Virus record (IMG/VR): IMGVR_UViG_3300050120_000230
Span: 62,001-126,000 of that record
Reading direction: 5' to 3' (one strand)
Length of the DNA stretch: 64,000 nucleotides
Shown one piece after another: positions 11,310-54,137 of this stretch. How positions within the stretch are numbered: position 1 is the stretch's first letter; each line of letters begins with the position of its first letter. A program made the position numbers and the translations under genes. Under the pieces are notes generated by a model. It was given only the letters and a program-made list of their open reading frames with translations, was not told where the DNA came from and did no database searches.

Positions 11310-11912
11310 TCAAGCCGCCGCTAGTTGTTCAAACGTGACCGAACCGTTTTTGGACTTGCCACGACGCTTCGGCTTGATGAGGATGTTCTCCTCGGGCCAC
11401 ATCAAATGTTCCACCCACGAGTGGTGCGGAACCGCGAGCGGGAACTCGCGGCGCCTTGCGACCATCTCGTAGTAGGACGGCCGATGGGGCTTGATCTTCG
11501 GTTGAATACGGAAGTCGCAGCCCTTACGGCTGTTACAATCGTAGCAGGCCGAAGTGAGGTTTTCCCAAGTCGAGCGCCCGCCGAAGGTCTTCGGCGTGAC
11601 GTGGTCGAGATTCAGGTCATCCTCGTGGAACTGGCCCTGACAGTAGGCACAGCGATAGCGGTCCCTCAGCTTGATGTTGTCCGGGCTCAATTGGACACCG
11701 AGAGACGGGCGGATGTAGCGGGTGGTCATAACGACCGCCGGAACCTGCATCTCCATGCTCGGGCTATGCACGACCCAGTCTTCGTAGGTCGCGAGCACGT
11801 TCACGGATTGAAGCCAGATGGCCTTGACCGCGTCTTGCCAGATGAGAGAGGAAACCGGAAGGACGCTCACAGGCAGTCCATCGGCGTTGAGAACCAGAGT
11901 ATCACCAACCAT
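11310..11912 (-). CDS. HNH endonuclease (McrA-like)
   Basis: TLVLNADG N-terminus; RDRYRCAYC...LDHVTPK..GG.STWEN..SACYDCNSRK; AGGAG RBS before the ATG at 11912. Confidence 0.9.
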   Translation of the reverse strand: MVGDTLVLNADGLPVSVLPVSSLIWQDAVKAIWLQSVNVLATYEDWVVHSPSMEMQVPAVVMTTRYIRPSLGVQLSPDNIKLRDRYRCAYCQGQFHEDDLNLDHVTPKTFGGRSTWENLTSACYDCNSRKGCDFRIQPKIKPHRPSYYEMVARRREFPLAVPHHSWVEHLMWPEENILIKPKRRGKSKNGSVTFEQLAAA

Positions 11913-11979
11913 TTTTCTCTCTCCTTTCTTCAGTGTCTTTTCGGGATATTTATTCCCGAAAAACCCACTGTTTCGGGAG

Positions 11980-13197
11980 CTAGTGCTTGGTGAAGTTCTC
12001 CATTTTGAGACCTTCGGGGGTGAAGCGCAGATCGACGGATGAAAGATAACCACCCTTGCCAGACCCGGTATCAAGGAAGACGGCTCGGCCGCCTTGCTCG
12101 TTGGTCTGTGTAATCGGGGCGACATACGAGCGTGCGTCATGGCCCACGAACACGGTTGTGTTCGATGGCACTGCTTCAACCCAATTGTAGGTCCGGCGCG
12201 GACGATCCGTCGCCGTGAAAGGGGTGGGCGACGGTTCGAACTCACCGAACAAGGAAAAGTTTTCCATGCTCTTGTGATCCTGTGCTGCGGTCCACCACGA
12301 GGGATGGATGGCGGCATGTGTGAATACGTAGTTATCTAAAGTGAGTGTCAGCGCGGAACGGGCAACCAAACCACGGAACCGAGCCATCCAGCGATCCCTA
12401 CGAGGATTGCCGAGATTGCTCAACGCAGTTGTGGTGACCTTATTGCCTTCACTCAAACGCATCATATGCCTGCCGCGTTCGGTTTGGTCAATCCATCGAG
12501 CGATTTTTCTCTCGTGGTTACCCACAATGAGTTCGCCGTGGCCCCGCATTACTGTCCGATAGACTTCGTCCGCGCATTCGAGCGAACCCGGTCCATAGTC
12601 AACAACGTCACCCAAGAAAATAATAAAGTGACGACGCAAACGAGCCCAATCGATGGCGGCCAACAGAGAATGGTGCATCCCATGAATGTCACCGATGACG
12701 GTGATACCTTGGAACTTCCGCGCCAAAACATTCACTTCATTGTTGGCCAGCTTCGTAACTGGTTCGAGACTGCTGGTTCGTAGATCGATGACTTCGGCCA
12801 CTCCATCACCGCGCAAGATATCTCGCTCGGCTGAAAGGAACCGTTGCCGCAATTGCGGATCAGCGGCAGAATTGTCGCAAACCAGATAAAAGACCGGAAC
12901 CCCGGCTGCCAACCCGATATTGGCCAGCGCGACACGCCCGTCTCGTCTCAGGTTGGCGGCGTTGACGATTACGCGCTCCCCAAGCTTCAGTTTAGTTTCG
13001 ACCCGCCGATGGATTTCAGAGAAGACAACCCCGTCGATGTCTCGACGATATGTGTCTCCGCTCAGTTCAAAGCGAACGGCATCTGCACTGATGATTTCGT
13101 AGGCCGGGAAATAAGAAGCCAACTTCTCTTCATTTTCAGAAGGCGTAGGGCCGACTGTAATAACGAGACAGTGCAGGGGAACTAGTTTGTTCATCAT
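11980..13197 (-). CDS. polynucleotide kinase/phosphatase-like protein (kinase-like plus metallophosphoesterase, no ligase domain)
   Basis: GDIHG, GDVVDYG, GNHE, VGH, DTG phosphoesterase motifs; N-terminal domain has Pnkp kinase layout with a degenerate P-loop. Confidence 0.8.
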   Translation of the reverse strand: MMNKLVPLHCLVITVGPTPSENEEKLASYFPAYEIISADAVRFELSGDTYRRDIDGVVFSEIHRRVETKLKLGERVIVNAANLRRDGRVALANIGLAAGVPVFYLVCDNSAADPQLRQRFLSAERDILRGDGVAEVIDLRTSSLEPVTKLANNEVNVLARKFQGITVIGDIHGMHHSLLAAIDWARLRRHFIIFLGDVVDYGPGSLECADEVYRTVMRGHGELIVGNHERKIARWIDQTERGRHMMRLSEGNKVTTTALSNLGNPRRDRWMARFRGLVARSALTLTLDNYVFTHAAIHPSWWTAAQDHKSMENFSLFGEFEPSPTPFTATDRPRRTYNWVEAVPSNTTVFVGHDARSYVAPITQTNEQGGRAVFLDTGSGKGGYLSSVDLRFTPEGLKMENFTKH

Positions 13198-20432: not shown

Positions 20433-21260
20433 TCAGTTTTGCAAGCTCTTAATTTCGCGGAGAAGTTCGATTTGGCGTTCGTTCACCAGTGAGGGAACTG
20501 TGACGCTTATTGTGACGATATGATCCCCACGCACGTCGCTGCCGATGACCGGCATCCCCCGGCCGGAAATCCTGATCTGGTGGCCGGTCTGGACACCCGG
20601 AGACGCTTCCACTTCGATCTCATCGCCGTCGATGGTCAACACTTTGAGCTTGATGCCAAGCATGGCGTCGATGGCGTTGATCGAAACGTCGGAGAACAGA
20701 TACTTGCCGTCGCGGCCGAACGGAAGGTCCGGGCGGATCGAAATGGTCACGAAGAGATCACCGGGCGGCGTGCCAGCGTGCACGTTCTCGCCAGCACCAG
20801 CCACGCGGATGCGCGTCCCGTTATCAACGCCTGCCGGAATCTTCAGACGGATTTCTCGATCCAGCAGCTTGAGGTTCACTTCGCAGCCACGGAACGCGTC
20901 GATGAATCCGATAGCGCAGTGCGAGGTGTAGTGACGGTTCGTCGTTTGCTGGCGGCGCTGCATCTCACGGATCATCGCTTCGATGTCCGGCGGCGCCCCT
21001 CCAAAACCAAAATGGAACTCATGGGCGCCATTTTGCTGACGGTGGCCAAAATCATGAGTAGGATTTCTCAGCGCGGCACGTTTTTCTGCGGTGTTGACCG
21101 CATTGTAGGCCGAGTTGATTTCTTTGAAACGACCTTCAGCACTAGGGTCACCGGCGTTGGCATCGGGGTGATGCTTCTTCGCTAGAGTTCGGAATGCAGA
21201 TTTGATTTGATCGTCGTTAGCATCCTGTGCAACGCCGAGGACGCTATAGGGATCGTTCAT
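20433..21260 (-). CDS. dnaJ: DnaJ-family co-chaperone without Zn finger
   Basis: J-domain with HPD; C-terminal KIPAGVDNG and PGDLFV; no CxxCxGxG repeats. Confidence 0.9.
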   Translation of the reverse strand: MNDPYSVLGVAQDANDDQIKSAFRTLAKKHHPDANAGDPSAEGRFKEINSAYNAVNTAEKRAALRNPTHDFGHRQQNGAHEFHFGFGGAPPDIEAMIREMQRRQQTTNRHYTSHCAIGFIDAFRGCEVNLKLLDREIRLKIPAGVDNGTRIRVAGAGENVHAGTPPGDLFVTISIRPDLPFGRDGKYLFSDVSINAIDAMLGIKLKVLTIDGDEIEVEASPGVQTGHQIRISGRGMPVIGSDVRGDHIVTISVTVPSLVNERQIELLREIKSLQN

Positions 21261-21649
21261 TTTGCTTTTGGCAAAGCCTTTGCTTCTTCTTGGAGGCGGC
21301 TGGGATCATTCACAACTCCCGTAAGGAAGTCGATGATTGCCTTCTGCTGCTTGATGTAAGTCTTAACATCAACCAGATTCCCAGACAATTTCTTAAAATT
21401 GGCCTCATCAAGGGTGAACAGAGTCACATTACCGCCATTCGCCTGAAGACTGGCGCCTAGAGCTTTCAACTCGTCAGCGTTATAGACCTTCCACTCGACA
21501 GACTGTGGCACCACGGGGTCGGCCTTGGGCACATCGATATGCGGGACAATGGAGACAGGCTGAATAACGACACGCGGCGGGGGTGCCGTGGCACATGCGG
21601 CAAGGCTCGCCGCCAGTGCGACGATCATCAAAAAACGAGGCGTTCTCAT
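21257..21649 (-). CDS. probable outer-membrane spanin (lipoprotein)
   Basis: signal peptide with LAAC lipobox, Pro-rich linker, coiled-coil; overlaps the i-spanin-like gene. Confidence 0.65.
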   Translation of the reverse strand: MRTPRFLMIVALAASLAACATAPPPRVVIQPVSIVPHIDVPKADPVVPQSVEWKVYNADELKALGASLQANGGNVTLFTLDEANFKKLSGNLVDVKTYIKQQKAIIDFLTGVVNDPSRLQEEAKALPKAK

Positions 21650-22062
21650 TTGGTGATCTCCTGAATCTCAGCAAAGATGCCGTTGGTGGTGTCGTTCGCC
21701 CACTTCTCGACGGCTTCGGGGTGGGCTACGGCGATTGTGTCCGCATCGTAGTTGTTGATCGCTTGGTGCTGCACTACACCGGTCTGACGGATATCGGCGA
21801 TCTGTGCATTTGTCGCAGCTTCGGCCGCTGCAACCCGCTTCGCCTCGTCATCCTTTGCCGCATTCAGCGCCGCGACGGTATCGGCATTGGCTTCAGATCG
21901 CCCGGCGGTGTGCGCGTCCGAGATTTCCTTCGCGATATGGGCCTCATACGCTTGGTATGCTTTGTAGGCGCCGAACAGCAGGCTGATGACGGCAAAACCG
22001 ATGCCGATCTTCAGACCCCAACTCTTGAAACCACCCTTAACTCGATCAAAGAAACTACTCAT
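21646..22062 (-). CDS. probable inner-membrane spanin
   Basis: N-terminal TM helix followed by Ala-rich coiled coil; GGAGG RBS; TAAATA at 22087-22092. Confidence 0.65.
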   Translation of the reverse strand: MSSFFDRVKGGFKSWGLKIGIGFAVISLLFGAYKAYQAYEAHIAKEISDAHTAGRSEANADTVAALNAAKDDEAKRVAAAEAATNAQIADIRQTGVVQHQAINNYDADTIAVAHPEAVEKWANDTTNGIFAEIQEITK

Positions 22063-22181: not shown

Positions 22182-22595
22182 ATGGTTGTCGTGCTGGTTA
22201 TAGCAGCGATCTTAGCGTTCCTGCCTCGTTGGTTCTGGAAAGTGCTGGCCGGTGCTCTAGTCGGCCTGTTCGTCATCACTCGATTGATGATGCCGACATC
22301 GGAAGCTGAACGTTTTGGACACTTCGTTGGCCACAAAGCAGGCGGCCGTGATCTCCAAATAGAGATGGTGGCCGACAATCAGGGTCATCATGACTTCACC
22401 GTGACCAACAACAGCGGCCTGCTGGTGGAAAACGTCATGCTGGCTTGTCAGAACACCGCCGGTGATACCTACCCGGTTCGGTTGGATGCCATCATCCGTC
22501 CCCACACCACCATCACCGAGTCCACCTATGACATCCATGGTGAGCCGAGAAGCACATGTGGATTCTCTTCGTGGGATGCATATCGGGCTAGCTAG
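22182..22595 (+). CDS. membrane-anchored hypothetical protein
   Basis: two N-terminal hydrophobic helices; GAGGAGG RBS; TTGACG promoter upstream. Confidence 0.7.
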   Translation: MVVVLVIAAILAFLPRWFWKVLAGALVGLFVITRLMMPTSEAERFGHFVGHKAGGRDLQIEMVADNQGHHDFTVTNNSGLLVENVMLACQNTAGDTYPVRLDAIIRPHTTITESTYDIHGEPRSTCGFSSWDAYRAS

Positions 22596-22599
22596 AAGA

Positions 22600-23320
22600 G
22601 AGTCTGAAGGCGAACATACGTCCGCCTTCAGGGATTAGCTCGTCTCTATGCTCACTACGTTCGCATTCGTCTCGCTATCCATCTTCTGTAAGCCCGAAGG
22701 GAAGATGAACGTTATATCCTAGATTTTAAGTTGCCTTTCTCTCCCCCGCACAGCCCCGAAGGGGCGGGCAAGAGAGAGAATGACGGCTACATCCTGAGTT
22801 TCGTAGCTGCTCAACCCGTGGTGCTCCGACCTCTCGGAAGCTGGCGGTTCCCCGATACCAGCTATAGCCACGCATCTCGACCTAACTCACCGGACTGTCG
22901 GATTGGGGGCCTAGTCGAACTGGATGTGGCAAACAGCCTTTTGCATCCGCCGACGCCTTGCGTCCTCGGTAGTCATTATTTGATCTGAACGGTTTTGTGT
23001 CTCACGCGCCCGCCGGTTGAGAGACGGGTCACGTATGGGGAGGCGCCAAAGTGCTCAAGGCACACTTCCCCTCTTTGTTTTGAGCGGCTAAGCCGCCCTG
23101 CGATTTCGTGAACGAGATGTTCACCGAGCTTGCCCATCCAAAAATGTTCGCTAACATGGAGTTGCACCATGCCGGACAGAAGAGGTGGTCTCGTTTCGGC
23201 GCGCTGCCATCGAACCGGTCTTTATATTACCAGCCAGATTTGTTGGGTGGGGTGACCCTATACTTCCCCTGCGCTATGGCAAATGCCCCGGTAGGGCAGA
23301 TTGAAGTCGGACTGTAGAAT
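22600..23320 (-). ncRNA. candidate large structured non-coding RNA (~720 nt)
   Basis: no credible ORF; more than a dozen hairpins with nested long-range stems; two C-UUCG-G tetraloops on the minus strand; strand and ends uncertain. Confidence 0.55.
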
Positions 23321-23328
23321 CGAGTCAG

Positions 23329-23718
23329 ATGATGAGTCAAAATGAATCACGAAAAGACATCATCGTTCGGCATAGAGCTTACGAAGATGAGAACCTCGAC
23401 AGTTATCGTTCTTCGACGGGCGGATTTCGGATATTGGACCTCTATACAGCTAGTTATGCTCTAGTTGCACGCTCATCTTTTAACCATCCACCACCGTTTC
23501 GATACATGTTCATCAAAAATCGAGCGGGTGGAGATGCTGCGTCGATGCGGTCTTACATCCGTAGCTGCATGAGTTTCGCAATCCTTGAAAGGATCATCCC
23601 CGATATCGACTTCCTGTCCTCGGACGTTGGAACCAATGTCGATCTGGCGTTCAATAATCGACGGGATTTGGCTCTTTTCAGGGTGATGTTTCCTGATACG
23701 GCCACTCTGCGAAGATAA
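23329..23718 (+). CDS. hypothetical protein (FKxxW-like C-terminus)
   Basis: LAFNNRRDLALFRVMF. Confidence 0.5.
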   Translation: MMSQNESRKDIIVRHRAYEDENLDSYRSSTGGFRILDLYTASYALVARSSFNHPPPFRYMFIKNRAGGDAASMRSYIRSCMSFAILERIIPDIDFLSSDVGTNVDLAFNNRRDLALFRVMFPDTATLRR

Positions 23719-23752: not shown

Positions 23753-23935
23753 ATGGCCCAGATTCAGAAGCAAACGATCACGATCACTCTCAGTAAGCTC
23801 GTGAAGACCGGCGACACCGCCGCAGACATGGGGCCGGAAGGCTTCGAAGCGGCTCTGGAAGCCGTCGTCACGGAATTGGTGGACGACGGCTCGGTGATCG
23901 TCGAAGTCGATAGCCTCACGCCGCCGACAGCGTAA
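23753..23935 (+). CDS. small late protein
   Basis: TAAATA at 23716-23721; AGGAG RBS. Confidence 0.65.
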   Translation: MAQIQKQTITITLSKLVKTGDTAADMGPEGFEAALEAVVTELVDDGSVIVEVDSLTPPTA

Positions 23936-24407
23936 CCACTACCGGATCGATGAGGCTGGACTGATAGTCATCTTCGATCCGGTAGATCAATTCGCGGAAG
24001 GACCGTTTGGCCTCTTCCGCATCAGAATTGGTGAGTCGGCCGTAAAGTTCGGCGACCATGTCATGGATCACTGTGCCGGGTTTCTGAGATTTTGCGATTT
24101 TCTCGCGCATCTCAGTCGGAATTTCGGTGCGATCCCAGAGCGCCTTCACGGCAGCATCACCCGCAAATTGAAAACCGGCGACCGGGTCATAGAATTTCGG
24201 CATCTGACCTTTGGATCGTTGCGGAGCGAACCGCATAGCCATGAAGAGGACGAACGCCCCATAGGGGATCGGGAGTCCTTTCATGAAAATGAAGGGCGCC
24301 AAGCTTTCCCCATCGGTGAACGTCTCAACGAACGGTCGCTCCCGTTCCATGATACTGACGACGATCCCACGATTGAGACAGTCGGACGGGATTTGTTCAA
24401 TATTCAT
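23916..24407 (-). CDS. hypothetical protein
   Basis: overlaps the end of the nucleotidyltransferase gene. Confidence 0.55.
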   Translation of the reverse strand: MNIEQIPSDCLNRGIVVSIMERERPFVETFTDGESLAPFIFMKGLPIPYGAFVLFMAMRFAPQRSKGQMPKFYDPVAGFQFAGDAAVKALWDRTEIPTEMREKIAKSQKPGTVIHDMVAELYGRLTNSDAEEAKRSFRELIYRIEDDYQSSLIDPVVVTLSAA

Positions 24408-25023
24408 CGACCGTCAACGTTTCTTTGGGGTTGAAGTTTTCCAGATCGACCCCGAACATATCTCGCAAGACGCCGGGGCCGGGCGTGAAGCCATAGGCAC
24501 AATATTTCGCGAGCCGGGCTGCGGTGGGGCGAGTGGGTGTGCGATGCAAGGTCAGCGTCTTGGCCGCCAAGGCAGCAGGCGCCCGATCATCGGCCAAGAG
24601 TGATCCGCCATCCGTGGCGAACATCGTCGCCGTCAGATCGAAATCATCGAGCAGTTCATCCGCCGAAGCGTAGTAGCGCCCCTTCACGAACTGGAAAGTG
24701 ACGATCTCTTCGACCTCACCCTCCATGAAGCCCAGTTCGAACTTGTTCGATTTCGGGTGCTTGAACTCGTTGACCACTCGCCACTGAGGCCGCTCGAAGG
24801 TCCGAACGTGTTCTCGAATCGAGGAACACACCCATTCGTGCACTTTCTCGCTCGGGGAGAAAATGTCGATGTCGGAATTACCGATGACCGTCTCACCATC
24901 GGCGAGGCGACGACAAATCCCTCCGGCGACCCACGGGCCGTATTCCAAGTTCAGAAACGGCAGCACAGTCGAGATGCGACGAACGATTGGATTGTCGTCG
25001 GCGAGAAGCGGCAAATGGATCAA
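24397..25023 (-). CDS. Pol-beta-fold nucleotidyltransferase (CCA/poly(A) head-domain-like)
   Basis: VAGGICRR...SDIDIF catalytic signature, LLDDFDLT (RDFT-like), RLAKY...GF. Confidence 0.75.
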   Translation of the reverse strand: MIHLPLLADDNPIVRRISTVLPFLNLEYGPWVAGGICRRLADGETVIGNSDIDIFSPSEKVHEWVCSSIREHVRTFERPQWRVVNEFKHPKSNKFELGFMEGEVEEIVTFQFVKGRYYASADELLDDFDLTATMFATDGGSLLADDRAPAALAAKTLTLHRTPTRPTAARLAKYCAYGFTPGPGVLRDMFGVDLENFNPKETLTVDEY

Positions 25024-27520: not shown

Positions 27521-30500
27521 ATGACCATTTCAGATCAAGATAAGGTAGACTTCCTCTGGAAGAAAGTGATTTTCGGTTACACGAAGACTGCTTCTGGAAC
27601 TGTCAAGCTCGGCTCGAACGAGAGCATTGCCTCGCCGTTCCCTGTGAACCCGGATAACATCTGGGCTGAAGCTGACCAGATCGCGGCGTCTCCTACGGCG
27701 AACACAACCGCGCAGGTTGGTGTCTTCAAGGGTGCAACGCGTATCCAAATGACGGTGGACCCGTCTTCCCCGCCGAACCAAACGTGGTTGGCGACGGGCA
27801 CCCACAATCTGCTCACCAGCCTGATGGGCGACTTCATTTCGCCGATCTACGGCCCCGGCTACAACGTGGCTGCCTATATCGGTGATCCGAACGTCGGCCC
27901 GGCCGCGCGAATTTTCCCCGATACGACGAACGAAGAGTTCGTGTTCGATTACTCGGCGGGCGTGCTGAATTTCCTCGGAAACATTCCGGCTTCGAAGCCT
28001 GCCACTATTGGCTCTGGCACAGTCTCGGTTTCCACGAACGGCGTCTATCTTGAAGCCTATCGCTACATCGGCACCAAGGGCGGCGGTGGATCGAGCGGTT
28101 CATTCGTCTCCAAGACCGGCGACACGATGTCCGGCCCGCTGGTGTTCGACTACACCTCTAACTCTGGCCAAACCGTTTTGGTGTTCTCGAACACTACAGC
28201 AAACGCCTTCGCCGGTATCGGGTCTCTGCAATCCGGCGAAACCCGCATCTTTGCCGATAGCAACAATGCTCTGAGCTTCGGTCACGTCTCCACGACGGAT
28301 GGCGTCACCTATCACGAAGACATGCGTCTCGGCGCTGATGGCGTCCTGAACATCGGCACCGGCAGCGGAGATGGTTTCATTACCGTCGATAACGGCAATC
28401 GCATCGTGTTCGGTGATATCGCCAACGGTTCGGTCAATGAGCAGATGGTTATCGATGCCAATGGCGTCGTCTACATCGGCGGCAACATGGTCTACCACAC
28501 CGGCAACCTCGATCTTGAGTCTCTGACTCTGACGAACACCGGTGTGACCGCAGGCACCTACACCTCCACAAACATCGTGGTTGATGCTCAAGGTCGCATC
28601 CTATCCGCCAGCAATGGTTCGGGCGGCGGCGGTGGTGGCGGCAACGGCACGGTGACCGAAGTCAGCATCGGTGGCTCGACCAGTGTTTCTGTTTCGGGCG
28701 CTCCTATCACGACAGACGGCACGTTCGTCATCGATCTGACCAATACTGGCGTTTCGGCTGGCACCTATGCGAAGGTCAGCGTTGACGCCAAGGGCCGCGT
28801 CCAATCGGGTTCTGGCCTCGCCAGCGGCGACGTGACCTCGGCTCTGGGCTTCACGCCGCTTCAGCACAACGAAACGATCACTGTCTCGGGAGACGTTACC
28901 GGCTCAGGCACGTCTTCGCTTGCTCTGACGCTCACCAACTCCGGCGTCACGGCTGGCACCTACAACAAAGTCATCGTCGATGCGAAGGGCCGCGTCGTCG
29001 GCTCCGGCGCGCTGACCTCGTCGGATGTTGATACGGCGCTGGGCTATACCCCGACCAATGCCGCCACGGCCATTGTCTTCACGGGCGATGTCACGGGTTC
29101 GGGCACCAATCCGATCAACCTGTCTCTGGCCAATACTGGTGTCGCAGCAGGCACATATACTCTCGCAACTTTGGTTGTCGATGCGAAAGGCCGCGTTCTG
29201 GCAGTCTCCAATGGCAGCGCCGTTGGCGGTTCCAACGGAACGGTTACGAGCGTCTCGGCAGTCGGTTCGGCCGACATCCACGTCAATGGTTCGGCGACGA
29301 TCACCACCACGGGTACTTTCACTTTCGATCTGGCCAACACCCCGGTTGCGGCAGGCGTCTACTCGCTCGCCACGATCTCGGTTGATGCCAAGGGTCGTAT
29401 CATCGCGGCGGCCAACGGCACAGCGGGCTCCGGCACGGTTACTAGCGTGGGCGTCAGTTCCACGACGTTGAACGTCTCTGGTAGCCCGGTCACTACGGCT
29501 GGCGTCATCTCTATCGACCTGACGAACACCGGCGTCACTGCTGGCACCTATGAAAAGGTGACCGTGGATGCACAAGGCCGCATTCATGCAGGTGCTGCTC
29601 TCGCAAGTGGTGATGTGACTTCGGCTCTGGGCTTCACTCCGCTTCAACACAACGAAGCGATCACCATTTCTGGCGACGCGGCCGGAACGGGTGCATCTGC
29701 AATCGCTTTGACGTTCGCTAACACTGGCGTCGCGGCGGGCACTTATTCTGCCGCAAACATCGTCGTTGACTCCAAGGGTCGTATCCTCTCGGCTGCCAAC
29801 GGCGCGGCCGGTGGCGGAAGCGGCACGGTTACCTCTGTGGACGTTACGGGTTCGGCCGACATCTCGGCAGTTGGTGGACCAATCACAGTCTCGGGCGCTA
29901 TCGCTCTGGGTCTATCGAACACCGGCGTCGTCGCTGGCACCTATACTCTCACCAACCTGACGGTTGACTCCAAGGGTCGTATCACCTCGATCCAGAATGG
30001 CACCGCTTCCGGCGCCGGAACTGTTACCTCAGTTTCGGTCACCGGCGACGGCGCGATCTCGTCCACCGGCGGGCCGATCACCAACACGGGCACAATCGCT
30101 CTCACGTTGTCCAACACGGGCGTTGCACATGGCACCTACACGAAGGTCATCGTTGATCTCCAAGGCCGTGTGACGGGCTCTCTGGCCCTCGCAAACACAG
30201 ACGTGACGACAGCCCTCGGCTTTACGCCGATTGCCAACACGATCATCGATCTCGGCTACACCCCGCTTCAGCACAACGAAAGCATCACCGTCGTTGGTGA
30301 TGTGGTCGGCGTTGGTTCGACCACTCTTTCGCTGGCTCTGCAAAACACCGGCGTGACCGCAGGCACCTACGAAAAGGTGACTGTGGACGCAAAGGGTCGG
30401 GTTCTCTCCGGCGGCGCGCTCGCCTCCGGCGATGTCACCACGGCGCTGGGCTTCACTCCGATTTCCGGCATCGTCAGCGGAGACGTTACGACGGCGCTGG

Positions 30501-31393
30501 GCTTCACTCCGCTTCAGCACAATGAGACCATCACGGTCTCCGGCGACGCTTCAGCCACCGGCACAACGACTCTGGCTCTGACGCTGGCCACCACTGGCGT
30601 CGCGGCGGGCACCTACACGAAGTTCACCGTTGACACCAAGGGCCGCGTCCTCACCGGTCTCGCTCTGGCGAACACGGATGTAACGACGGCGCTGGGCTTC
30701 ACTCCGCTTCAGCACAACGAAACGATCACCCTGTCGGGTGACGTGGTTGGCTCTGGTGCAAATGCTATCGCCACCACGCTGACGAACACCGGCGTGACAC
30801 CGGGCACCTACACCTCCACGAATATTGTGGTCGATGCGAAGGGCCGTATCACGGCTGCTTCGAACGGCACTGGTGGCGGTGGTGGTTCTCTCGCGATCAC
30901 GAAGGCAAACGCTTCCATCGTTTCCGCAGCTTCGACGCTGAACTTCACCGGTAACGGTGTGACCGTCGTGGACCAAGGTTCTGGTGTAGCTCACATCGAC
31001 ATTCCGAGCAACGTCGAATGGGTTTCGTTCCTGTATTCGGGCACCACGCCTCAGCTTACGGGCGGTGATGCAATTCAAGCCAATTCGGCTGGCGTTGTCG
31101 CGACGATCACTGATGGTTCGACTTCGACCGTCACGTTCACGTTCACCGGATATCCTTTCCCGCCGACCTCCATTGCGGTCATGGGCCAGTCATATACTGC
31201 GAACGTCTTCAACTATCAGAACATGAACCCGACCTTCACGAGCAGTGCGATTCCGGGTGGAAACACCAGTGCGGCTCCGTCGATGTTTGGTGCGTTCTCT
31301 TCGATCTCGTTGAAAATTCCGGGTGGTGTTACGGGGGCTTCTACTACGAGCGCCCTGCAACGTCCGCGCGGTTACGTGATGTTCAAGTTCTAA
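27521..31393 (+). CDS. long fibre protein with tandem repeats
   Basis: 12 copies of L.NTGV.AGTY....VD.KGR interleaved with ALGFTP and GTVTSV modules. Confidence 0.85.
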   Translation: MTISDQDKVDFLWKKVIFGYTKTASGTVKLGSNESIASPFPVNPDNIWAEADQIAASPTANTTAQVGVFKGATRIQMTVDPSSPPNQTWLATGTHNLLTSLMGDFISPIYGPGYNVAAYIGDPNVGPAARIFPDTTNEEFVFDYSAGVLNFLGNIPASKPATIGSGTVSVSTNGVYLEAYRYIGTKGGGGSSGSFVSKTGDTMSGPLVFDYTSNSGQTVLVFSNTTANAFAGIGSLQSGETRIFADSNNALSFGHVSTTDGVTYHEDMRLGADGVLNIGTGSGDGFITVDNGNRIVFGDIANGSVNEQMVIDANGVVYIGGNMVYHTGNLDLESLTLTNTGVTAGTYTSTNIVVDAQGRILSASNGSGGGGGGGNGTVTEVSIGGSTSVSVSGAPITTDGTFVIDLTNTGVSAGTYAKVSVDAKGRVQSGSGLASGDVTSALGFTPLQHNETITVSGDVTGSGTSSLALTLTNSGVTAGTYNKVIVDAKGRVVGSGALTSSDVDTALGYTPTNAATAIVFTGDVTGSGTNPINLSLANTGVAAGTYTLATLVVDAKGRVLAVSNGSAVGGSNGTVTSVSAVGSADIHVNGSATITTTGTFTFDLANTPVAAGVYSLATISVDAKGRIIAAANGTAGSGTVTSVGVSSTTLNVSGSPVTTAGVISIDLTNTGVTAGTYEKVTVDAQGRIHAGAALASGDVTSALGFTPLQHNEAITISGDAAGTGASAIALTFANTGVAAGTYSAANIVVDSKGRILSAANGAAGGGSGTVTSVDVTGSADISAVGGPITVSGAIALGLSNTGVVAGTYTLTNLTVDSKGRITSIQNGTASGAGTVTSVSVTGDGAISSTGGPITNTGTIALTLSNTGVAHGTYTKVIVDLQGRVTGSLALANTDVTTALGFTPIANTIIDLGYTPLQHNESITVVGDVVGVGSTTLSLALQNTGVTAGTYEKVTVDAKGRVLSGGALASGDVTTALGFTPISGIVSGDVTTALGFTPLQHNETITVSGDASATGTTTLALTLATTGVAAGTYTKFTVDTKGRVLTGLALANTDVTTALGFTPLQHNETITLSGDVVGSGANAIATTLTNTGVTPGTYTSTNIVVDAKGRITAASNGTGGGGGSLAITKANASIVSAASTLNFTGNGVTVVDQGSGVAHIDIPSNVEWVSFLYSGTTPQLTGGDAIQANSAGVVATITDGSTSTVTFTFTGYPFPPTSIAVMGQSYTANVFNYQNMNPTFTSSAIPGGNTSAAPSMFGAFSSISLKIPGGVTGASTTSALQRPRGYVMFKF

Positions 31394-46079: not shown

Positions 46080-46119
46080 GATACGCGCATAGTCCTAGAA
46101 AATATACTCAGAGTCTATT

Positions 46120-46401
46120 TCAATCGAAATACTTATCCAAAAACGCACTATATTCACTAGGCGTCATGCTAGTAACATCTGTTCCACGATCCACATCAGC
46201 AATATTTGCTTTTGCAATAAGATCAGACACTTTTCTAGAAGAGTCGAATACCAAAGTATCTAGTATGGGAGTGAAATCGATTGGAATACTAAAGACACCA
46301 AACAAGTTTGAGGTGTCCGTTTGCGGCATAGAAAATTGCAGTTGGCCATCGAAGGCTAACGTGGAGGTCAAAAAATCCATAGGTGCCTTGGTAGTCTCCA
46401 T
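46120..46401 (-). CDS. small acidic protein, putative antitoxin
   Basis: directly upstream of the RelE-like gene; AT-rich; TAAATA at 46407-46412. Confidence 0.45.
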   Translation of the reverse strand: METTKAPMDFLTSTLAFDGQLQFSMPQTDTSNLFGVFSIPIDFTPILDTLVFDSSRKVSDLIAKANIADVDRGTDVTSMTPSEYSAFLDKYFD

Positions 46402-46441
46402 CTGAGTATTTATGCGCGCTATCGGATGATGTTGTCTATAA

Positions 46442-46470
46442 GAAAAGGCCCCGAGGTTCGGGGCCTTTTC
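46442..46470. terminator. bidirectional intrinsic terminator
   Basis: GAAAAGGCCCCGA-GGT-TCGGGGCCTTTTC. Confidence 0.85.
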
Positions 46471-46479
46471 CTAGTTCAT

Positions 46480-46710
46480 TTACTCGTCGTTGACGAAGAC
46501 GCCGGTGACTTTCACCGATACGATGGCCGTCAGTGGAATGTAGAGTCGGGGCGCCGTATCCGGCATGTTCGAGAAGATCAGCAGGCCGTTGTCCAGAACT
46601 TCGGCCATTCCAGCGCCGAGATAGGTAGTTCCATCCACGCACACGATGTCGTAGGTATCAGTGGGATTGTCTGAAGCATAAGTGCTCAGAGCCGTAGTAA
46701 CATTCGACAT
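46480..46710 (-). CDS. small hypothetical protein
   Basis: AAGGA RBS; bounded by hairpins. Confidence 0.6.
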   Translation of the reverse strand: MSNVTTALSTYASDNPTDTYDIVCVDGTTYLGAGMAEVLDNGLLIFSNMPDTAPRLYIPLTAIVSVKVTGVFVNDE

Positions 46711-46826
46711 ATCAAAAGTCCTTTACTCGGTTAATACCGTAACTTTGTCTCAAAGCAAGACGATAGTCAAAAAGAAACGCCCCCAAGTTTCCTTGAGGGC
46801 GCCCTTTATTCATTGACGAACTTGGA

Positions 46827-49908: not shown

Positions 49909-50172
49909 GGGTAATAAGGACACCATCTCTGCCCTCAAAGGAGTTACGCGGCGAGCGCGTAGTCCATGCTAACGTTGTCGTTGGCATTTAGAAATGTGAA
50001 CTGATTGGCGGTCGTTTCTTACCGGGATTCTCGCAAACCTTTTACCGTCGCCAATCGAAAGCTGTTCGCCCCCGCACTTCCCGGTGACAACGCCGGAGAA
50101 AGATTGGTGGAGGCGCGGGGATTCGCACCCCGGTCTTGCCGACTTATTCTGATGTGGTCATCAAATCCAAGG
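49900..50172 (-). ncRNA. ssrA: circularly permuted (two-piece) tmRNA
   Basis: acceptor piece ends CGCCTCC-ACCA at 50105; coding piece starts GGGGGCG at 50073 (G3-U70 Ala identity); tag ANDNVSMDYALAA-stop at 49985-49944; outer ends approximate. Confidence 0.95.
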
Positions 50173-52947: not shown

Positions 52948-53342
52948 CACATCCATCTCAATTTGAAAAGTACCGCGTCGTTTTCGCGCTCGAACCCGAT
53001 GCTCCAAGCATCGAGATAATCTACGTCGTTCGCCGCACAATGTTTGGCTTCGAGCAGATCAAACCAGAAGATTATTTCACATGCTCCAATGTGAAACTGA
53101 TCTACCCATTCCATGAAAGACACGGTCGGCCGCAGGAGAAACGGCCCAGACCACGGAGACGGATCGTCATCCAGTTTGGGTCGATTATCGACAGGGTGAC
53201 GCTCGTAGTTTTTGAGGGCGAACTCCGGCCATTCATTCAGCATGACTCTATGGGGTAGGCGCCCAGCCCAGCGATCTACCGGTTTCCAGTTGGCTGCACC
53301 GAGACCGATAGGGTTTATGGCTGACCGCTTCATCCGATCCAT
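52947..53342 (-). CDS. FKxRW-family hypothetical protein
   Basis: ends IGFERENDAVLFKLRWM. Confidence 0.7.
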   Translation of the reverse strand: MDRMKRSAINPIGLGAANWKPVDRWAGRLPHRVMLNEWPEFALKNYERHPVDNRPKLDDDPSPWSGPFLLRPTVSFMEWVDQFHIGACEIIFWFDLLEAKHCAANDVDYLDAWSIGFERENDAVLFKLRWM

Positions 53343-53536
53343 CGCATCTTGAACAGTACGGCATCTTCATCGTTTTCAAAACGAACTGTATGCCGGGAAG
53401 GAGGATGATCGGCGAAATGAAACTCGTGAGGTGCTCGCAGGTTGCTACGACACCATTTCTCGATTTCCGGCTTCAATCTGCCGCCGATATTATCGATGCA
53501 GTCAAGATTTTCAAATGAGACAGTTTTCGATGACAT
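53330..53536 (-). CDS. FKxRW-family hypothetical protein
   Basis: ends VRFENDEDAVLFKMRWIG. Confidence 0.7.
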   Translation of the reverse strand: MSSKTVSFENLDCIDNIGGRLKPEIEKWCRSNLRAPHEFHFADHPPSRHTVRFENDEDAVLFKMRWIG

Positions 53537-53781
53537 CACGACCATCTCATTTTGAAAACGATGAAATCTGCATCACGCCCAAACGCACAATGGTAGCCAT
53601 TGAACACGGCGCCATACTGCGTCAAGTCAGCATTGATGGTGTTTTTTTGTTGTGCCCTGATATTTTTCAGAGACACGCCAAGTGTTGGGTCATACGAGAT
53701 CATATTCAAATGATCTATGAAGTTCTGCCAAAATTTCGGACTGTCATGGTAGCCATTGATTTCGAGGATCATCCGATCCAT
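53536..53781 (-). CDS. FKxRW-family hypothetical protein
   Basis: ends AFGRDADFIVFKMRWS. Confidence 0.7.
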   Translation of the reverse strand: MDRMILEINGYHDSPKFWQNFIDHLNMISYDPTLGVSLKNIRAQQKNTINADLTQYGAVFNGYHCAFGRDADFIVFKMRWS

Positions 53782-54137
53782 CTCATTTTGAACATGACAG
53801 CATCGCGCACATCAGAAAATGAAATCTGCCATCTCTTGACGCCCAATGGCGCGTCTCGATCACCCAGCCATCCGTATCGTTCCATCATGTTTTTGAAACG
53901 CATACACAACGCTTTGTATTCCGCCTCGCCGTTTTGCACCGAATATGGTGAGACTTCGATTCGCCGAAGACGATAGTTTCCGCGAAGAGACCCGGCCCAT
54001 TCTTTGAACATTGGACTGATTACGACGGACCATCTGCCCGCAACGGTTTCTGATTTTTGGAAATCCCAAAGTATCTTGCTGATCGAACGGTCAAGCACGA
54101 CGACTTTGTGCTCTAGGTCCACCGAAGTTTCACCCAC
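53769..54137 (-). CDS. FKxRW-family hypothetical protein
   Basis: ends ISFSDVRDAVMFKMRWIG. Confidence 0.7.
   Translation of the reverse strand: MGETSVDLEHKVVVLDRSISKILWDFQKSETVAGRWSVVISPMFKEWAGSLRGNYRLRRIEVSPYSVQNGEAEYKALCMRFKNMMERYGWLGDRDAPLGVKRWQISFSDVRDAVMFKMRWIG

What the first reader, a model, noticed from the sequence alone, without database searches (positions are those of the whole stretch)
22600..23320. ~720-nt ORF-free region that is almost continuously base-paired: candidate large ornate RNA
Seen: this is the longest non-coding gap in a gene-dense window. Stems include CTGAAGGCG/CGCCTTCAG, CATCTTC/GAAGATG, TTCTCTC/GAGAGAA enclosing GCCCC-GAA-GGGGC, GCTAC/GTAGC, and CGTGG/CCACG enclosing TCCGA/TCGGA and AGCTGG/CCAGCT. 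Others are TCGAC/GTCGA, GGATG/CATCC, GACGC/GCGTC, GTCTC/GAGAC, GCGGC/GCCGC, GTGAAC/GTTCAC and TGCCC/GGGCA. A long-range AATGAC/GTCATT pair closes a multi-stem domain. Two loops read C-UUCG-G on the minus strand, favouring that strand. Known: phages carry large structured RNAs such as GOLLD and ROOL of unclear function. Inference: a large ncRNA, or alternatively a structured replication origin or packaging site.
Basis: partly seen in the sequence, partly recalled or inferred. Interest (0 to 1): 0.8.

Follow-up and report, generated by a model that had tools for sequence, protein, structure and literature searches.

The report
New large structured phage RNA
The gap holds a gene for a roughly 700-base, intricately folded non-coding RNA, conserved in a dozen uncultured huge phages and matching no catalogued RNA family, which would add one to the very few large "ornate" RNAs known.

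Summary
The window comes from a 415-kb uncultured huge phage. The ORF-free stretch 22596-23328 is real. Homologous, syntenic stretches were found in 11 other distinct huge-phage sequences (47-95% identical to each other).

They show block-wise nucleotide conservation, no conserved ORF and heavy compensatory base-pair change. In the central 300 nt, 95.6% of cells pair against 80.6% in shuffles, 30 of 50 pairs have double changes, and 0 of 500 shuffles reach that.

Two H-type pseudoknots, a three-way junction with a GNRA loop, a long 3' arm and a tandem-G·A hairpin are supported.

The RNA most likely lies on the minus strand (about 23304 to 22600, some 700 nt). Evidence: a conserved TTGACT-N17/18-TAnnnT promoter flanked by palindromic operator-like boxes, a terminal hairpin, and an excess of G·U over A·C.

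MFE z-score alone is not decisive, because other windows of this genome score as low.

There is no Rfam match (GOLLD, ROOL, OLE, introns, RNase P all negative), no tRNAs nearby and no origin-like repeats.

Two copies of an AGGAU-type motif change in concert across lineages, which suggests two sites for one co-evolving partner. Function is unknown. The best guess is a trans-acting scaffold or self-assembling RNA.

The parts
23335..23340 (-). -35 element TTGACT of the RNA's promoter
   Evidence: Consensus scan. Present in all 11 complete homologs as TTGACT or ATGACA, with a 17-18 nt spacer.
23311..23316 (-). -10 element TACAGT (TAnnnT type). The inferred start of the RNA is about 7 nt downstream, near 23304.
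   Evidence: The start site is inferred, not measured.
23315..23326 (.). Proximal operator-like box, GACTCGATTCTA on the minus strand. It matches the palindrome AGAATCGATTCT at 10 of 12 positions and sits in the spacer, just upstream of and overlapping the -10. On the plus strand it reads TAGAAT..., a possible -10 for the divergent gene at 23329.
   Evidence: Present in most of the 11 complete homologs (9-12 of 12 matches in ten; degenerate in L006). Perfect palindrome in L038.
23342..23350 (.). Distal box upstream of the -35. It is only a half-site (GATTCA) in the window's clade and a full second copy of the palindrome in L016, L017, L037 and L038.
22600..23304 (-). Body of the proposed non-coding RNA, about 700 nt (667-777 nt in homologs).
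   Evidence: nhmmer and CM homology to 11 other sequences. Lengths and identities. No conserved ORF.
23284..23298 (-). Absent from L014, L018 and L006.
   Evidence: The distance from the -10 to the first conserved helix varies from 15 to 41 nt.
23201..23274 (-). 5' domain closed by helix GCGC (23271-23274 / 23201-23204). It contains an H-type pseudoknot: stem A 23266-23269 / 23249-23252 and stem B 23255-23258 / 23245-23248. It also contains hairpin 23229-23233 / 23215-23219.
   Evidence: The same pseudoknot architecture forms in all 11 sequences, with changes such as GGGG/CCCC to GGAG/CUCC, GGGC/GCCC and GGUG/CACC. Shuffled sequence gives it in 21% of trials per sequence.
23108..23171 (-). Two conserved hairpins: CAUGG/CCAUG (23167-23171 / 23155-23159) and GUGAAC/GUUCAC (23119-23124 / 23108-23113).
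   Evidence: Compensatory changes seen in the alignments. The rest of this stretch is not resolved.
23084..23097 (-). GCGGC/GCCGC hairpin, an insertion found only in the window's sequence.
23037..23071 (-). Helices 1 and 2 of the central domain (23067-23071 / 23037-23041 and 23059-23062 / 23044-23047).
   Evidence: 98-100% of cells paired, with double changes in 4 of 9 pairs. There are five U·G pairs at one position, which would be mismatches on the plus strand.
23003..23035 (-). Hairpin (23025-23035 / 23003-23012) whose loop carries CUCAACC (23015-23021).
   Evidence: all 6 scored pairs show compensatory change. The stem sequences are entirely different in L017 and L038.
22810..22816 (-). GGUUGAG, the distal strand that pairs with the hairpin loop CUCAACC (23015-23021). 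This H-type pseudoknot closes a domain of about 200 nt.
   Evidence: helix 3. Examples: CUCAUCC/GGAUGAG in L010, CUCAAUC/GAUUGAG in L018, L029 and L037. Also inverted repeat I6.
22817..22872 (-). Three-way junction: helix 22867-22872 / 22817-22822; hairpin 22857-22862 / 22840-22845 capped by GG/CC and a GGAA (GNRA) loop at 22848-22851; hairpin 22834-22838 / 22825-22829.
Evidence: helices 7-10: 96-97% paired, 11 of 19 pairs with double changes.
22900..22965 (-). Long-range helix GGAC.. (22962-22965) with ..UCC (22900-22903), plus GG/CC (22956-22957 / 22908-22909). It encloses hairpin GGAUG/CAUCC (22944-22948 / 22922-22926).
Evidence: helices 5-6 (all 6 pairs with double changes, e.g. GAUAC/GUAUC, GAGAC/GUCUC, GCGAC/GUCGC). 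for GGAUG/CAUCC.
22728..22792 (-). Long 3' arm: base GUAGCC / GGCAAC, stem UUCUCUCUC.. (22766-22780) / GGGGGAGAGAA (22737-22747), and a variable tip.
   Evidence: It forms an end-to-end hairpin in 11 of 12 homologs despite lengths of 60-113 nt. Duplex z-scores are -2.6 to -7.8 against shuffles.
22789..22799 (-). Twin motif, copy 1 (ACUCAGGAUGU).
   Evidence: Changes in concert with copy 2 across lineages.
22714..22724 (-). Twin motif, copy 2 (AUCUAGGAUAU).
   Evidence: 64 of 80 positions are identical within genomes against 44.6 for random pairing of genomes, with 0 of 20000 permutations as high.
22680..22707 (-). A hairpin or two occur here in most homologs but cannot be aligned.
22632..22680 (-). 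Helix GGAU.AGC (22674-22680) / GCU.AUCC (22632-22639), enclosing a hairpin with tandem G·A pairs (GCGAAC GUA GUGAGC, 22650-22664).
   Evidence: 6 of 10 pairs with double changes. Fully different helix sequences occur in L018 and L006.
22604..22631 (-). Terminal GC-rich hairpin, terminator-like. It lies between the RNA and the convergent plus-strand gene that ends at 22595.
   Evidence: Scan hit. A hairpin is present at this place in all homologs with different sequences. The U-tract is weak.

Best explanation
The gap encodes a stand-alone non-coding RNA of about 700 nt on the minus strand.

Shown: the sequence is conserved at a syntenic place in a clade of huge phages and evolves under strong selection for a multi-domain fold. 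The fold includes two H-type pseudoknots, a three-way junction with a GNRA loop, a long helical arm and a tandem-G·A hairpin. No protein is encoded.

Inferred from conserved signals: host-type RNA polymerase starts at a TTGACT-N18-TACAGT promoter (start near 23304). A dimeric DNA-binding regulator controls it through palindromic AGAATCGATTCT-like boxes that flank the -35. The transcript ends at the hairpin 22631-22604.

Inferred by analogy and from the twin co-evolving AGGAU-type motifs: the folded RNA acts in trans as a structural particle. It would be either an RNA-protein complex or a self-assembling RNA of the GOLLD/ROOL kind, and it would offer two identical sites to one partner that co-evolves with it. 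Its biological role during infection is not known.
For: Homologs and synteny.

Covariation: 95.6% paired against 80.6% shuffled and 30-45% in slid controls; 30 of 50 pairs with double changes; 0 of 500 shuffles; 6 of 6 pairs.

Non-coding.

Strand: promoter with fixed geometry in 11 of 11 complete homologs; terminal hairpin; G·U 38 against A·C 12 in the CM alignment and 55 against 33 in the set of pairs predicted on both strands; MFE z -3.7 on minus against -0.9 on plus.

Independence from neighbours: the flanking genes differ between homologs (the upstream plus-strand gene is absent in L014 and L018; the divergent gene is absent in L014 and L038) while the RNA stays.

Twin motif.
Against: There are no transcript data, so the start, end and strand rest on sequence signals. 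The -10 is weakly defined beyond 'TA', and the invariant bases there could belong to the operator or to a plus-strand TAGAAT promoter. The terminal hairpin lacks a good U-tract in most homologs, so read-through into the downstream minus-strand lysis and chaperone genes is possible. The G·U/A·C test uses related sequences and is only modest in the unbiased set (p about 0.02). About a third of the RNA (23080-23200 and parts of 22870-23000) has no settled structure. No partner protein was identified. Trans action and assembly are analogy, not evidence.
Confidence: 0.6

Rival explanations
1. It is a long cis-acting leader. The minus-strand transcript continues past the hairpin into the spanin-DnaJ-deformylase-ClpB genes, and the fold controls their expression by attenuation or processing.
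For: In L014 and L018 the element lies directly upstream of, and on the same strand as, those genes, with only about 40-50 nt between them. The terminal hairpin has a poor U-tract.
Against: In most homologs (8 of the 11 complete loci) a conserved convergent plus-strand membrane-protein gene sits between the element and the operon, so any read-through would be antisense for about 400 nt. 700 nt with two pseudoknots is far beyond known leaders. No riboswitch or leader family matches.
Confidence: 0.12
2. It is a ribozyme: a new large catalytic RNA (self-processing, or acting on another RNA) rather than a passive scaffold.
For: Its size, pseudoknots, GNRA loop and strictly invariant single-stranded blocks (for example AACCGUUC, CUCAA, GAACUCAG) resemble large ribozymes.
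Against: No similarity to group I or II introns, RNase P or any self-cleaving class. No split gene flanks it, so it is not an intron. Nothing points to a substrate.
Confidence: 0.12
3. The functional strand is the plus strand. The fold would be a 3' UTR of the membrane-protein gene (22182-22595) or a 5' UTR of the gene starting at 23329.
For: Both neighbours are on the plus strand. An invariant TAGAAT lies on the plus strand at 23315-23320. Alifold energies are similar on both strands.
Against: A·C mismatches on plus outnumber G·U, with several positions mismatched in about half of the sequences (U·G x5, G·U x6, U·G x7). The plus-strand MFE is no better than shuffles. The TAGAAT lies at the 3' end of the element on that strand, so it cannot drive it. 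Both neighbouring genes are dispensable in some homologs.
Confidence: 0.08
4. It is a DNA-level element (replication origin or packaging site) that forms structures in single-stranded DNA.
For: It lies where leftward and rightward gene blocks diverge, and cumulative GC skew peaks near 22 kb.
Against: No iterons, direct repeats or AT-rich tract (GC 52%). The skew follows gene orientation across the whole window. Nested long-range helices and pseudoknots with strand-specific G·U tolerance are the signature of RNA.
Confidence: 0.03

Closest known systems
ROOL and GOLLD RNAs (large 'ornate' RNAs of phages and prophages)
   Same: Phage-encoded, 600-800 nt, multi-domain with several pseudoknots, no obligate neighbouring protein gene, function unknown (sizes and properties from PMC12286853).
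   Different: No sequence or structure match to their Rfam models. Not next to tRNA islands: there are no tRNAs in the 64-kb window. It is found only in one clade of huge phages, apparently of Alphaproteobacteria, at one syntenic place. It has its own operator-flanked promoter. Oligomer formation is untested.
OLE RNA
   Same: About 600 nt, highly structured, and works with partner proteins (PMC12286853). That is a model for how a large RNA can be a scaffold.
   Different: OLE is bacterial (extremophilic Firmicutes) and sits beside its partner gene. Here there is no match to the model and no conserved RNA-binding neighbour. The always-present 56-60 aa protein gave no informative match.
Csr/Rsm-type sponge RNAs
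   Same: Repeated GGA-containing motifs next to hairpins. CAGGAUG resembles the CsrB repeat (my recollection, not tested).
   Different: There are only two copies. In L016, L017 and L037 both copies read AGCAU, without GGA. The RNA is far more structured than a sponge.
Short candidate structured RNAs catalogued from IMG/VR (PMC10690425)
   Same: Same data source and the same discovery logic (covariation in phage intergenic regions).
   Different: Those motifs are 29-151 nt long. A 700-nt RNA is not described there. Whether fragments of it are among the 8495 motifs could not be checked.

Membership tests
GOLLD / ROOL / OLE / HEARO / raiA (Rfam large RNA families) | Match to the family covariance model | tested here: not met
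   Nothing at the gathering threshold in the window or in six homolog loci. No match to any of them up to E = 10 in 22200-23700.
GOLLD / ROOL | Frequent location next to tRNA islands in phages or prophages | tested here: not met
   ARAGORN finds no tRNA in the 64-kb window. The neighbours are chaperone, lysis and tail genes.
GOLLD / ROOL | Phage-encoded, over 550 nt, multi-pseudoknot fold supported by covariation | tested here: met
GOLLD / ROOL | Homo-oligomeric cage | not testable with these tools
   Needs in vitro transcription with cryo-EM, native gels or SEC-MALS.
Group I / group II introns, RNase P, tmRNA | Match to the family model; for introns, a split host gene | tested here: not met
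   No Rfam match. The flanking ORFs are complete, unrelated genes. The window's tmRNA is elsewhere, at 49944-50168.
Independent bacterial-type transcription unit | -35 and -10 hexamers with 16-18 nt spacing upstream, stem-loop terminator downstream | tested here: inconclusive
   The promoter geometry is conserved in 11 of 11 homologs. The terminal hairpin is conserved but its U-tract is weak. There are no transcript data.
Replication origin | Iterons or initiator boxes, AT-rich unwinding element | tested here: not met
   Only two weak two-copy direct repeats. GC 52%.
Protein-coding gene | Conserved ORF, codon-position pattern of substitution | tested here: not met

The most novel reading that the evidence does not exclude
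This is the founding member of a new class of large functional RNA: either a self-assembling RNA particle or a ribozyme. It would be specific to huge phages of Alphaproteobacteria, switched on by a dedicated repressor-controlled promoter, and would carry two identical recognition modules that co-evolve with an unidentified phage or host partner.
Probability: 0.3. Interest if true: 0.9.

Novelty: new variant of a known kind. Interest (0 to 1): 0.8.

Why it matters
Only a handful of bacterial or phage RNAs above 500 nt with elaborate conserved folds are known: rRNA, RNase P, group II introns, OLE, GOLLD, ROOL and HEARO. Each has led to new biochemistry or unexpected architecture. This one is a clean new case. 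It has clear boundaries, 12 diverse sequences, two covarying pseudoknots and a regulated promoter. It also shows an unusual pair of motifs that evolve in concert, which gives a direct handle for finding its partner. It further shows that huge phages, already known for carrying translation and chaperone genes, carry large RNAs that current RNA libraries miss.

Tried and rejected
- Rfam at permissive thresholds on the region gave only chance-level hits.
- blastn of the element against 50,697 GenBank phages found no match. The cultured relatives (phiCbK and CcrColossus-like phages) share the 641-aa tail-module protein but not the locus or the RNA.
- The flanking orphan proteins were used as bait in IMG/VR and returned only the source contig.
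- Degenerate DNA pattern scans recovered the true homologs L020, L028, L029 and L030/L035. They also returned coding-sequence false positives (L021-L027, L031-L034, L036), which were discarded after nhmmer and inspection.
- MFE z-score as a discriminator was rejected after the genome-background control.
- MAFFT-based alifold failed on the length-variable 3' arm and on the 5' pseudoknot. It was replaced by anchor-based per-sequence analysis.
- The idea that the always-adjacent 56-60 aa protein is a ribbon-helix-helix repressor for the palindromic boxes was not supported. Its N-terminus looks like CopG to my eye, but there was no Pfam, PDB or Atlas support and the model was poor.
- A search for trans targets complementary to two invariant single-stranded blocks within the window gave chance level only.
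- A search for an intramolecular partner of the twin motif found none that co-varies.
- CsrA-sponge reading: the GGA is lost in one clade.

Full report
**What the window is.** The flanking proteins and a 641-aa neighbour place the window on IMGVR_UViG_3300050120_000230, a 415-kb viral contig. It encodes a family-B DNA polymerase, DNA ligase, seryl-tRNA synthetase, a ClpB-like ATPase, DnaJ, peptide deformylase and a 980-aa tail sheath protein. It also carries a permuted, alpha-proteobacterial type tmRNA at 49944-50168. The 641-aa protein has relatives in Caulobacter and Brevundimonas giant phages. Together with the tmRNA type, this suggests an alphaproteobacterial host; that is an inference.

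**The observation.** The interval 22596-23328 holds only short ORFs with negative coding scores. Folding energy alone is not convincing. The minus strand folds 3.4-3.7 sd below dinucleotide shuffles and the plus strand 0.9-2.0 sd below. However, 26 control windows across the same 64 kb average -1.45 sd, and three of them reach -3.1 to -4.1. The claim 'more paired than chance' therefore had to be tested by comparison with relatives.

**Relatives.**
- A related 578-kb phage contig (L006) carries a syntenic stretch that nhmmer aligns to window 22712-23348 at E = 7.6e-34, while tblastx finds nothing protein-like there.
- Using orthologs of the 641-aa protein as handles, and degenerate DNA patterns built from invariant blocks, I collected 11 further distinct copies: L020, L010, L012, L014, L018 (identical to L028), L029 (partial), L006, L017, L016, L037 and L038.
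- They come from contigs of up to 578 kb in JGI, ENA, NCBI and Logan assemblies.
- All complete copies lie between the ClpB-deformylase-DnaJ block and a small conserved 56-60 aa gene, a Gad2-like nucleotidyltransferase and the tail module.
- Pairwise identity of the element runs from 47 to 95%, and its length from 667 to 777 nt.
- One more distant phage locus without the synteny (L019), and the CcrColossus locus, lack it. GenBank phages give no blastn hit.
- No stop-free stretch is shared, and variation shows no codon periodicity.

**Structure.**
- *Central domain.* For the central 300 nt (window 23079-22784), RNAalifold predicted 50 pairs, 29 of them with compensatory change. After realignment to a covariance model, 95.6% of pair cells are standard pairs. 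This compares with 80.6% when partners are shuffled among sequences and 30-45% when partners are slid by 1-3 columns. Thirty of the 50 pairs show double changes, and none of 500 shuffles reaches any of the five measures.
- *Central pseudoknot.* A hairpin at 23035-23003 has all six scored pairs covarying, with wholly different stems in L017 and L038. Its loop, CUCAACC, pairs with GGUUGAG about 200 nt downstream (CUCAUCC/GGAUGAG in L010; CUCAAUC/GAUUGAG in three lineages). This is a classical H-type pseudoknot with a very large third loop.
- *Inside that domain* lie a long-range helix that changes completely between lineages (GGAC.., GAUAC/GUAUC, GAGAC/GUCUC, GCGAC/GUCGC), the GGAUG/CAUCC hairpin, and a three-way junction. 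One arm of the junction ends in a conserved GNRA loop (GGAA or GAGA).
- *5' domain.* It is closed by a GCGC helix and holds a second H-type pseudoknot. All 11 sequences can form it with matching changes in both stems, and it also holds a covarying hairpin.
- *3' domain.* It has a long arm that pairs end to end in 11 of 12 sequences, although its length varies from 60 to 113 nt. It also has a variable hairpin, a helix enclosing a hairpin with tandem G·A pairs, and a terminal GC-rich hairpin.
- *Unresolved.* About a third of the molecule (roughly 23080-23200 and parts of 22870-23000) remains unresolved.
Among the five is the proposed long-range AATGAC/GTCATT closure.

**Strand and ends.**
- On the minus strand, a -35 TTGACT (ATGACA in one clade), a 17-18 nt spacer and a TAnnnT-like -10 are found at the same place in all 11 complete copies. 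They are followed after 15-41 variable nucleotides by the first conserved helix.
- The -35 is flanked by boxes resembling the palindrome AGAATCGATTCT. There are two perfect or near-perfect copies in L038, L037, L017 and L016, and one copy plus a half-site in the window's clade. This looks like an operator for a dimeric regulator.
- The other end is a hairpin (22631-22604) that the scan scores as terminator-like on the minus strand. It is present in every homolog with different sequence, although the U-tract is weak. It faces the stop codon of a convergent plus-strand gene.
- In helices supported by covariation, G·U pairs on the minus strand outnumber A·C by 38 to 12. In the unbiased set of pairs predicted on both strands the count is 55 to 33.
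- The MFE asymmetry points the same way.
- I therefore place the RNA on the minus strand, from about 23304 to about 22600, with roughly 80% confidence in the strand.

**An unexpected feature.**
- The 3' domain carries two copies of a motif: ACUCAGGAUGU at 22799-22789 and AUCUAGGAUAU at 22724-22714. Each lies just 5' of a hairpin arm.
- Across lineages the two copies change together. Both gain an A in L012. Both read GGGUGAAU in L018, AGCAUC in L016/L017, AGCAUAG in L037 and GGGAUG in L029.
- Within-genome identity is 64 of 80 positions, against 44.6 for random pairing of genomes, with 0 of 20000 permutations as high.
- I found no complementary segment inside the RNA that follows these changes.
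- The simplest reading is two equivalent sites for one partner that co-evolves with the RNA. Gene conversion between duplicated modules is the alternative.

**What it is not.**
- No Rfam family matches, at gathering or permissive thresholds, in the window or in six homolog loci. This excludes GOLLD, ROOL, OLE, HEARO, introns, RNase P and known riboswitches as relatives.
- There are no tRNAs in the window, so the typical GOLLD/ROOL neighbourhood is absent.
- There are no iterons or AT-rich tract. The GC-skew turn near 22 kb follows gene orientation.
- The IMG/VR-wide catalogue of phage RNA motifs reports only motifs of 29-151 nt.
- I found no paper describing this RNA.

**How it probably works.**
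- Shown: a conserved, non-coding, elaborately folded sequence with its own conserved promoter-like and hairpin signals.
- Inferred: host-type polymerase transcribes a discrete RNA of about 700 nt under the control of a regulator that binds the palindromic boxes. The RNA then folds into a compact particle and acts in trans.
- By analogy with ROOL, GOLLD and OLE, and because of the twin motifs, I favour a scaffold or self-assembling particle that binds two copies of one partner.
- A ribozyme, a giant leader for the downstream lysis and chaperone genes (plausible in L014 and L018, where no gene intervenes), a plus-strand UTR, and a DNA element are ranked below it, for the reasons given under rivals.

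**Limits.**
- There are no expression data.
- The 12 sequences come from perhaps 8-9 independent lineages.
- Shuffle controls ignore phylogeny.
- Full-length covariance search of public collections and R-scape were not available.
- The 5' and 3' domain structures rest partly on per-sequence analysis rather than on a single alignment.

Noticed in passing
window 49944-50168 (-): A permuted (two-piece, alpha-proteobacterial type) tmRNA gene: 123 bits to tmRNA_permuted and 83 bits to alpha_tmRNA. ARAGORN did not report it.
   Followed up: no
window 11700-12432 (-) and 53100-53832 (both strands): These windows fold as far below shuffles as the finding (z -4.07, and -4.14 / -2.70). They overlap stretches where a crude gene caller found no gene. 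The second has no Rfam match, but it does contain ORFs of 71-181 aa.
   Followed up: partly
window 46080-46826: An ORF-poor stretch of about 750 nt with the lowest GC of the window (47%). It is as long as the finding's gap.
   Followed up: no
window 23315-23352; same place in L016, L017, L037, L038: Palindromic AGAATCGATTCT-like boxes flank the -35 of the RNA promoter. The divergent plus-strand gene (ATG at 23329/23332) starts only 8-11 nt after a plus-strand TAGAAT, so it may be a leaderless mRNA sharing this control region.
   Followed up: partly
window 23753-23935 (+) and orthologs (alignment A5): A small acidic 56-60 aa protein is present next to the RNA in nearly all homolog loci examined (mean column identity 63%). 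No family, structure or Atlas hit explains it.
   Followed up: partly
window 24397-25023 (-), 21257-22062 (-), 22182-22595 (+): The neighbours are a Gad2-like nucleotidyltransferase (a family named for anti-Gabija proteins), two Rz-like spanins and a conserved membrane protein with invariant cysteines. The RNA therefore sits between lysis/chaperone genes and a possible anti-defence gene.
   Followed up: no
window 27521-31393 (+): The 1290-aa protein has a weak hit to the photosystem II PsbR family (E 1.3e-6, residues 408-469), which recurs faintly in the L019 ortholog. It is probably a low-complexity or chance match within a tail-module protein.
   Followed up: no
L019 (GCA_043956695.1, contig of 1.14 Mb): A relative of the 641-aa tail-module protein lies on a 1.1-Mb contig with phage-like neighbours (thymidine kinase, DHFR, cell-wall hydrolase) but without the chaperone block or the RNA. 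This is either a very large phage genome or a chimeric assembly.
   Followed up: no
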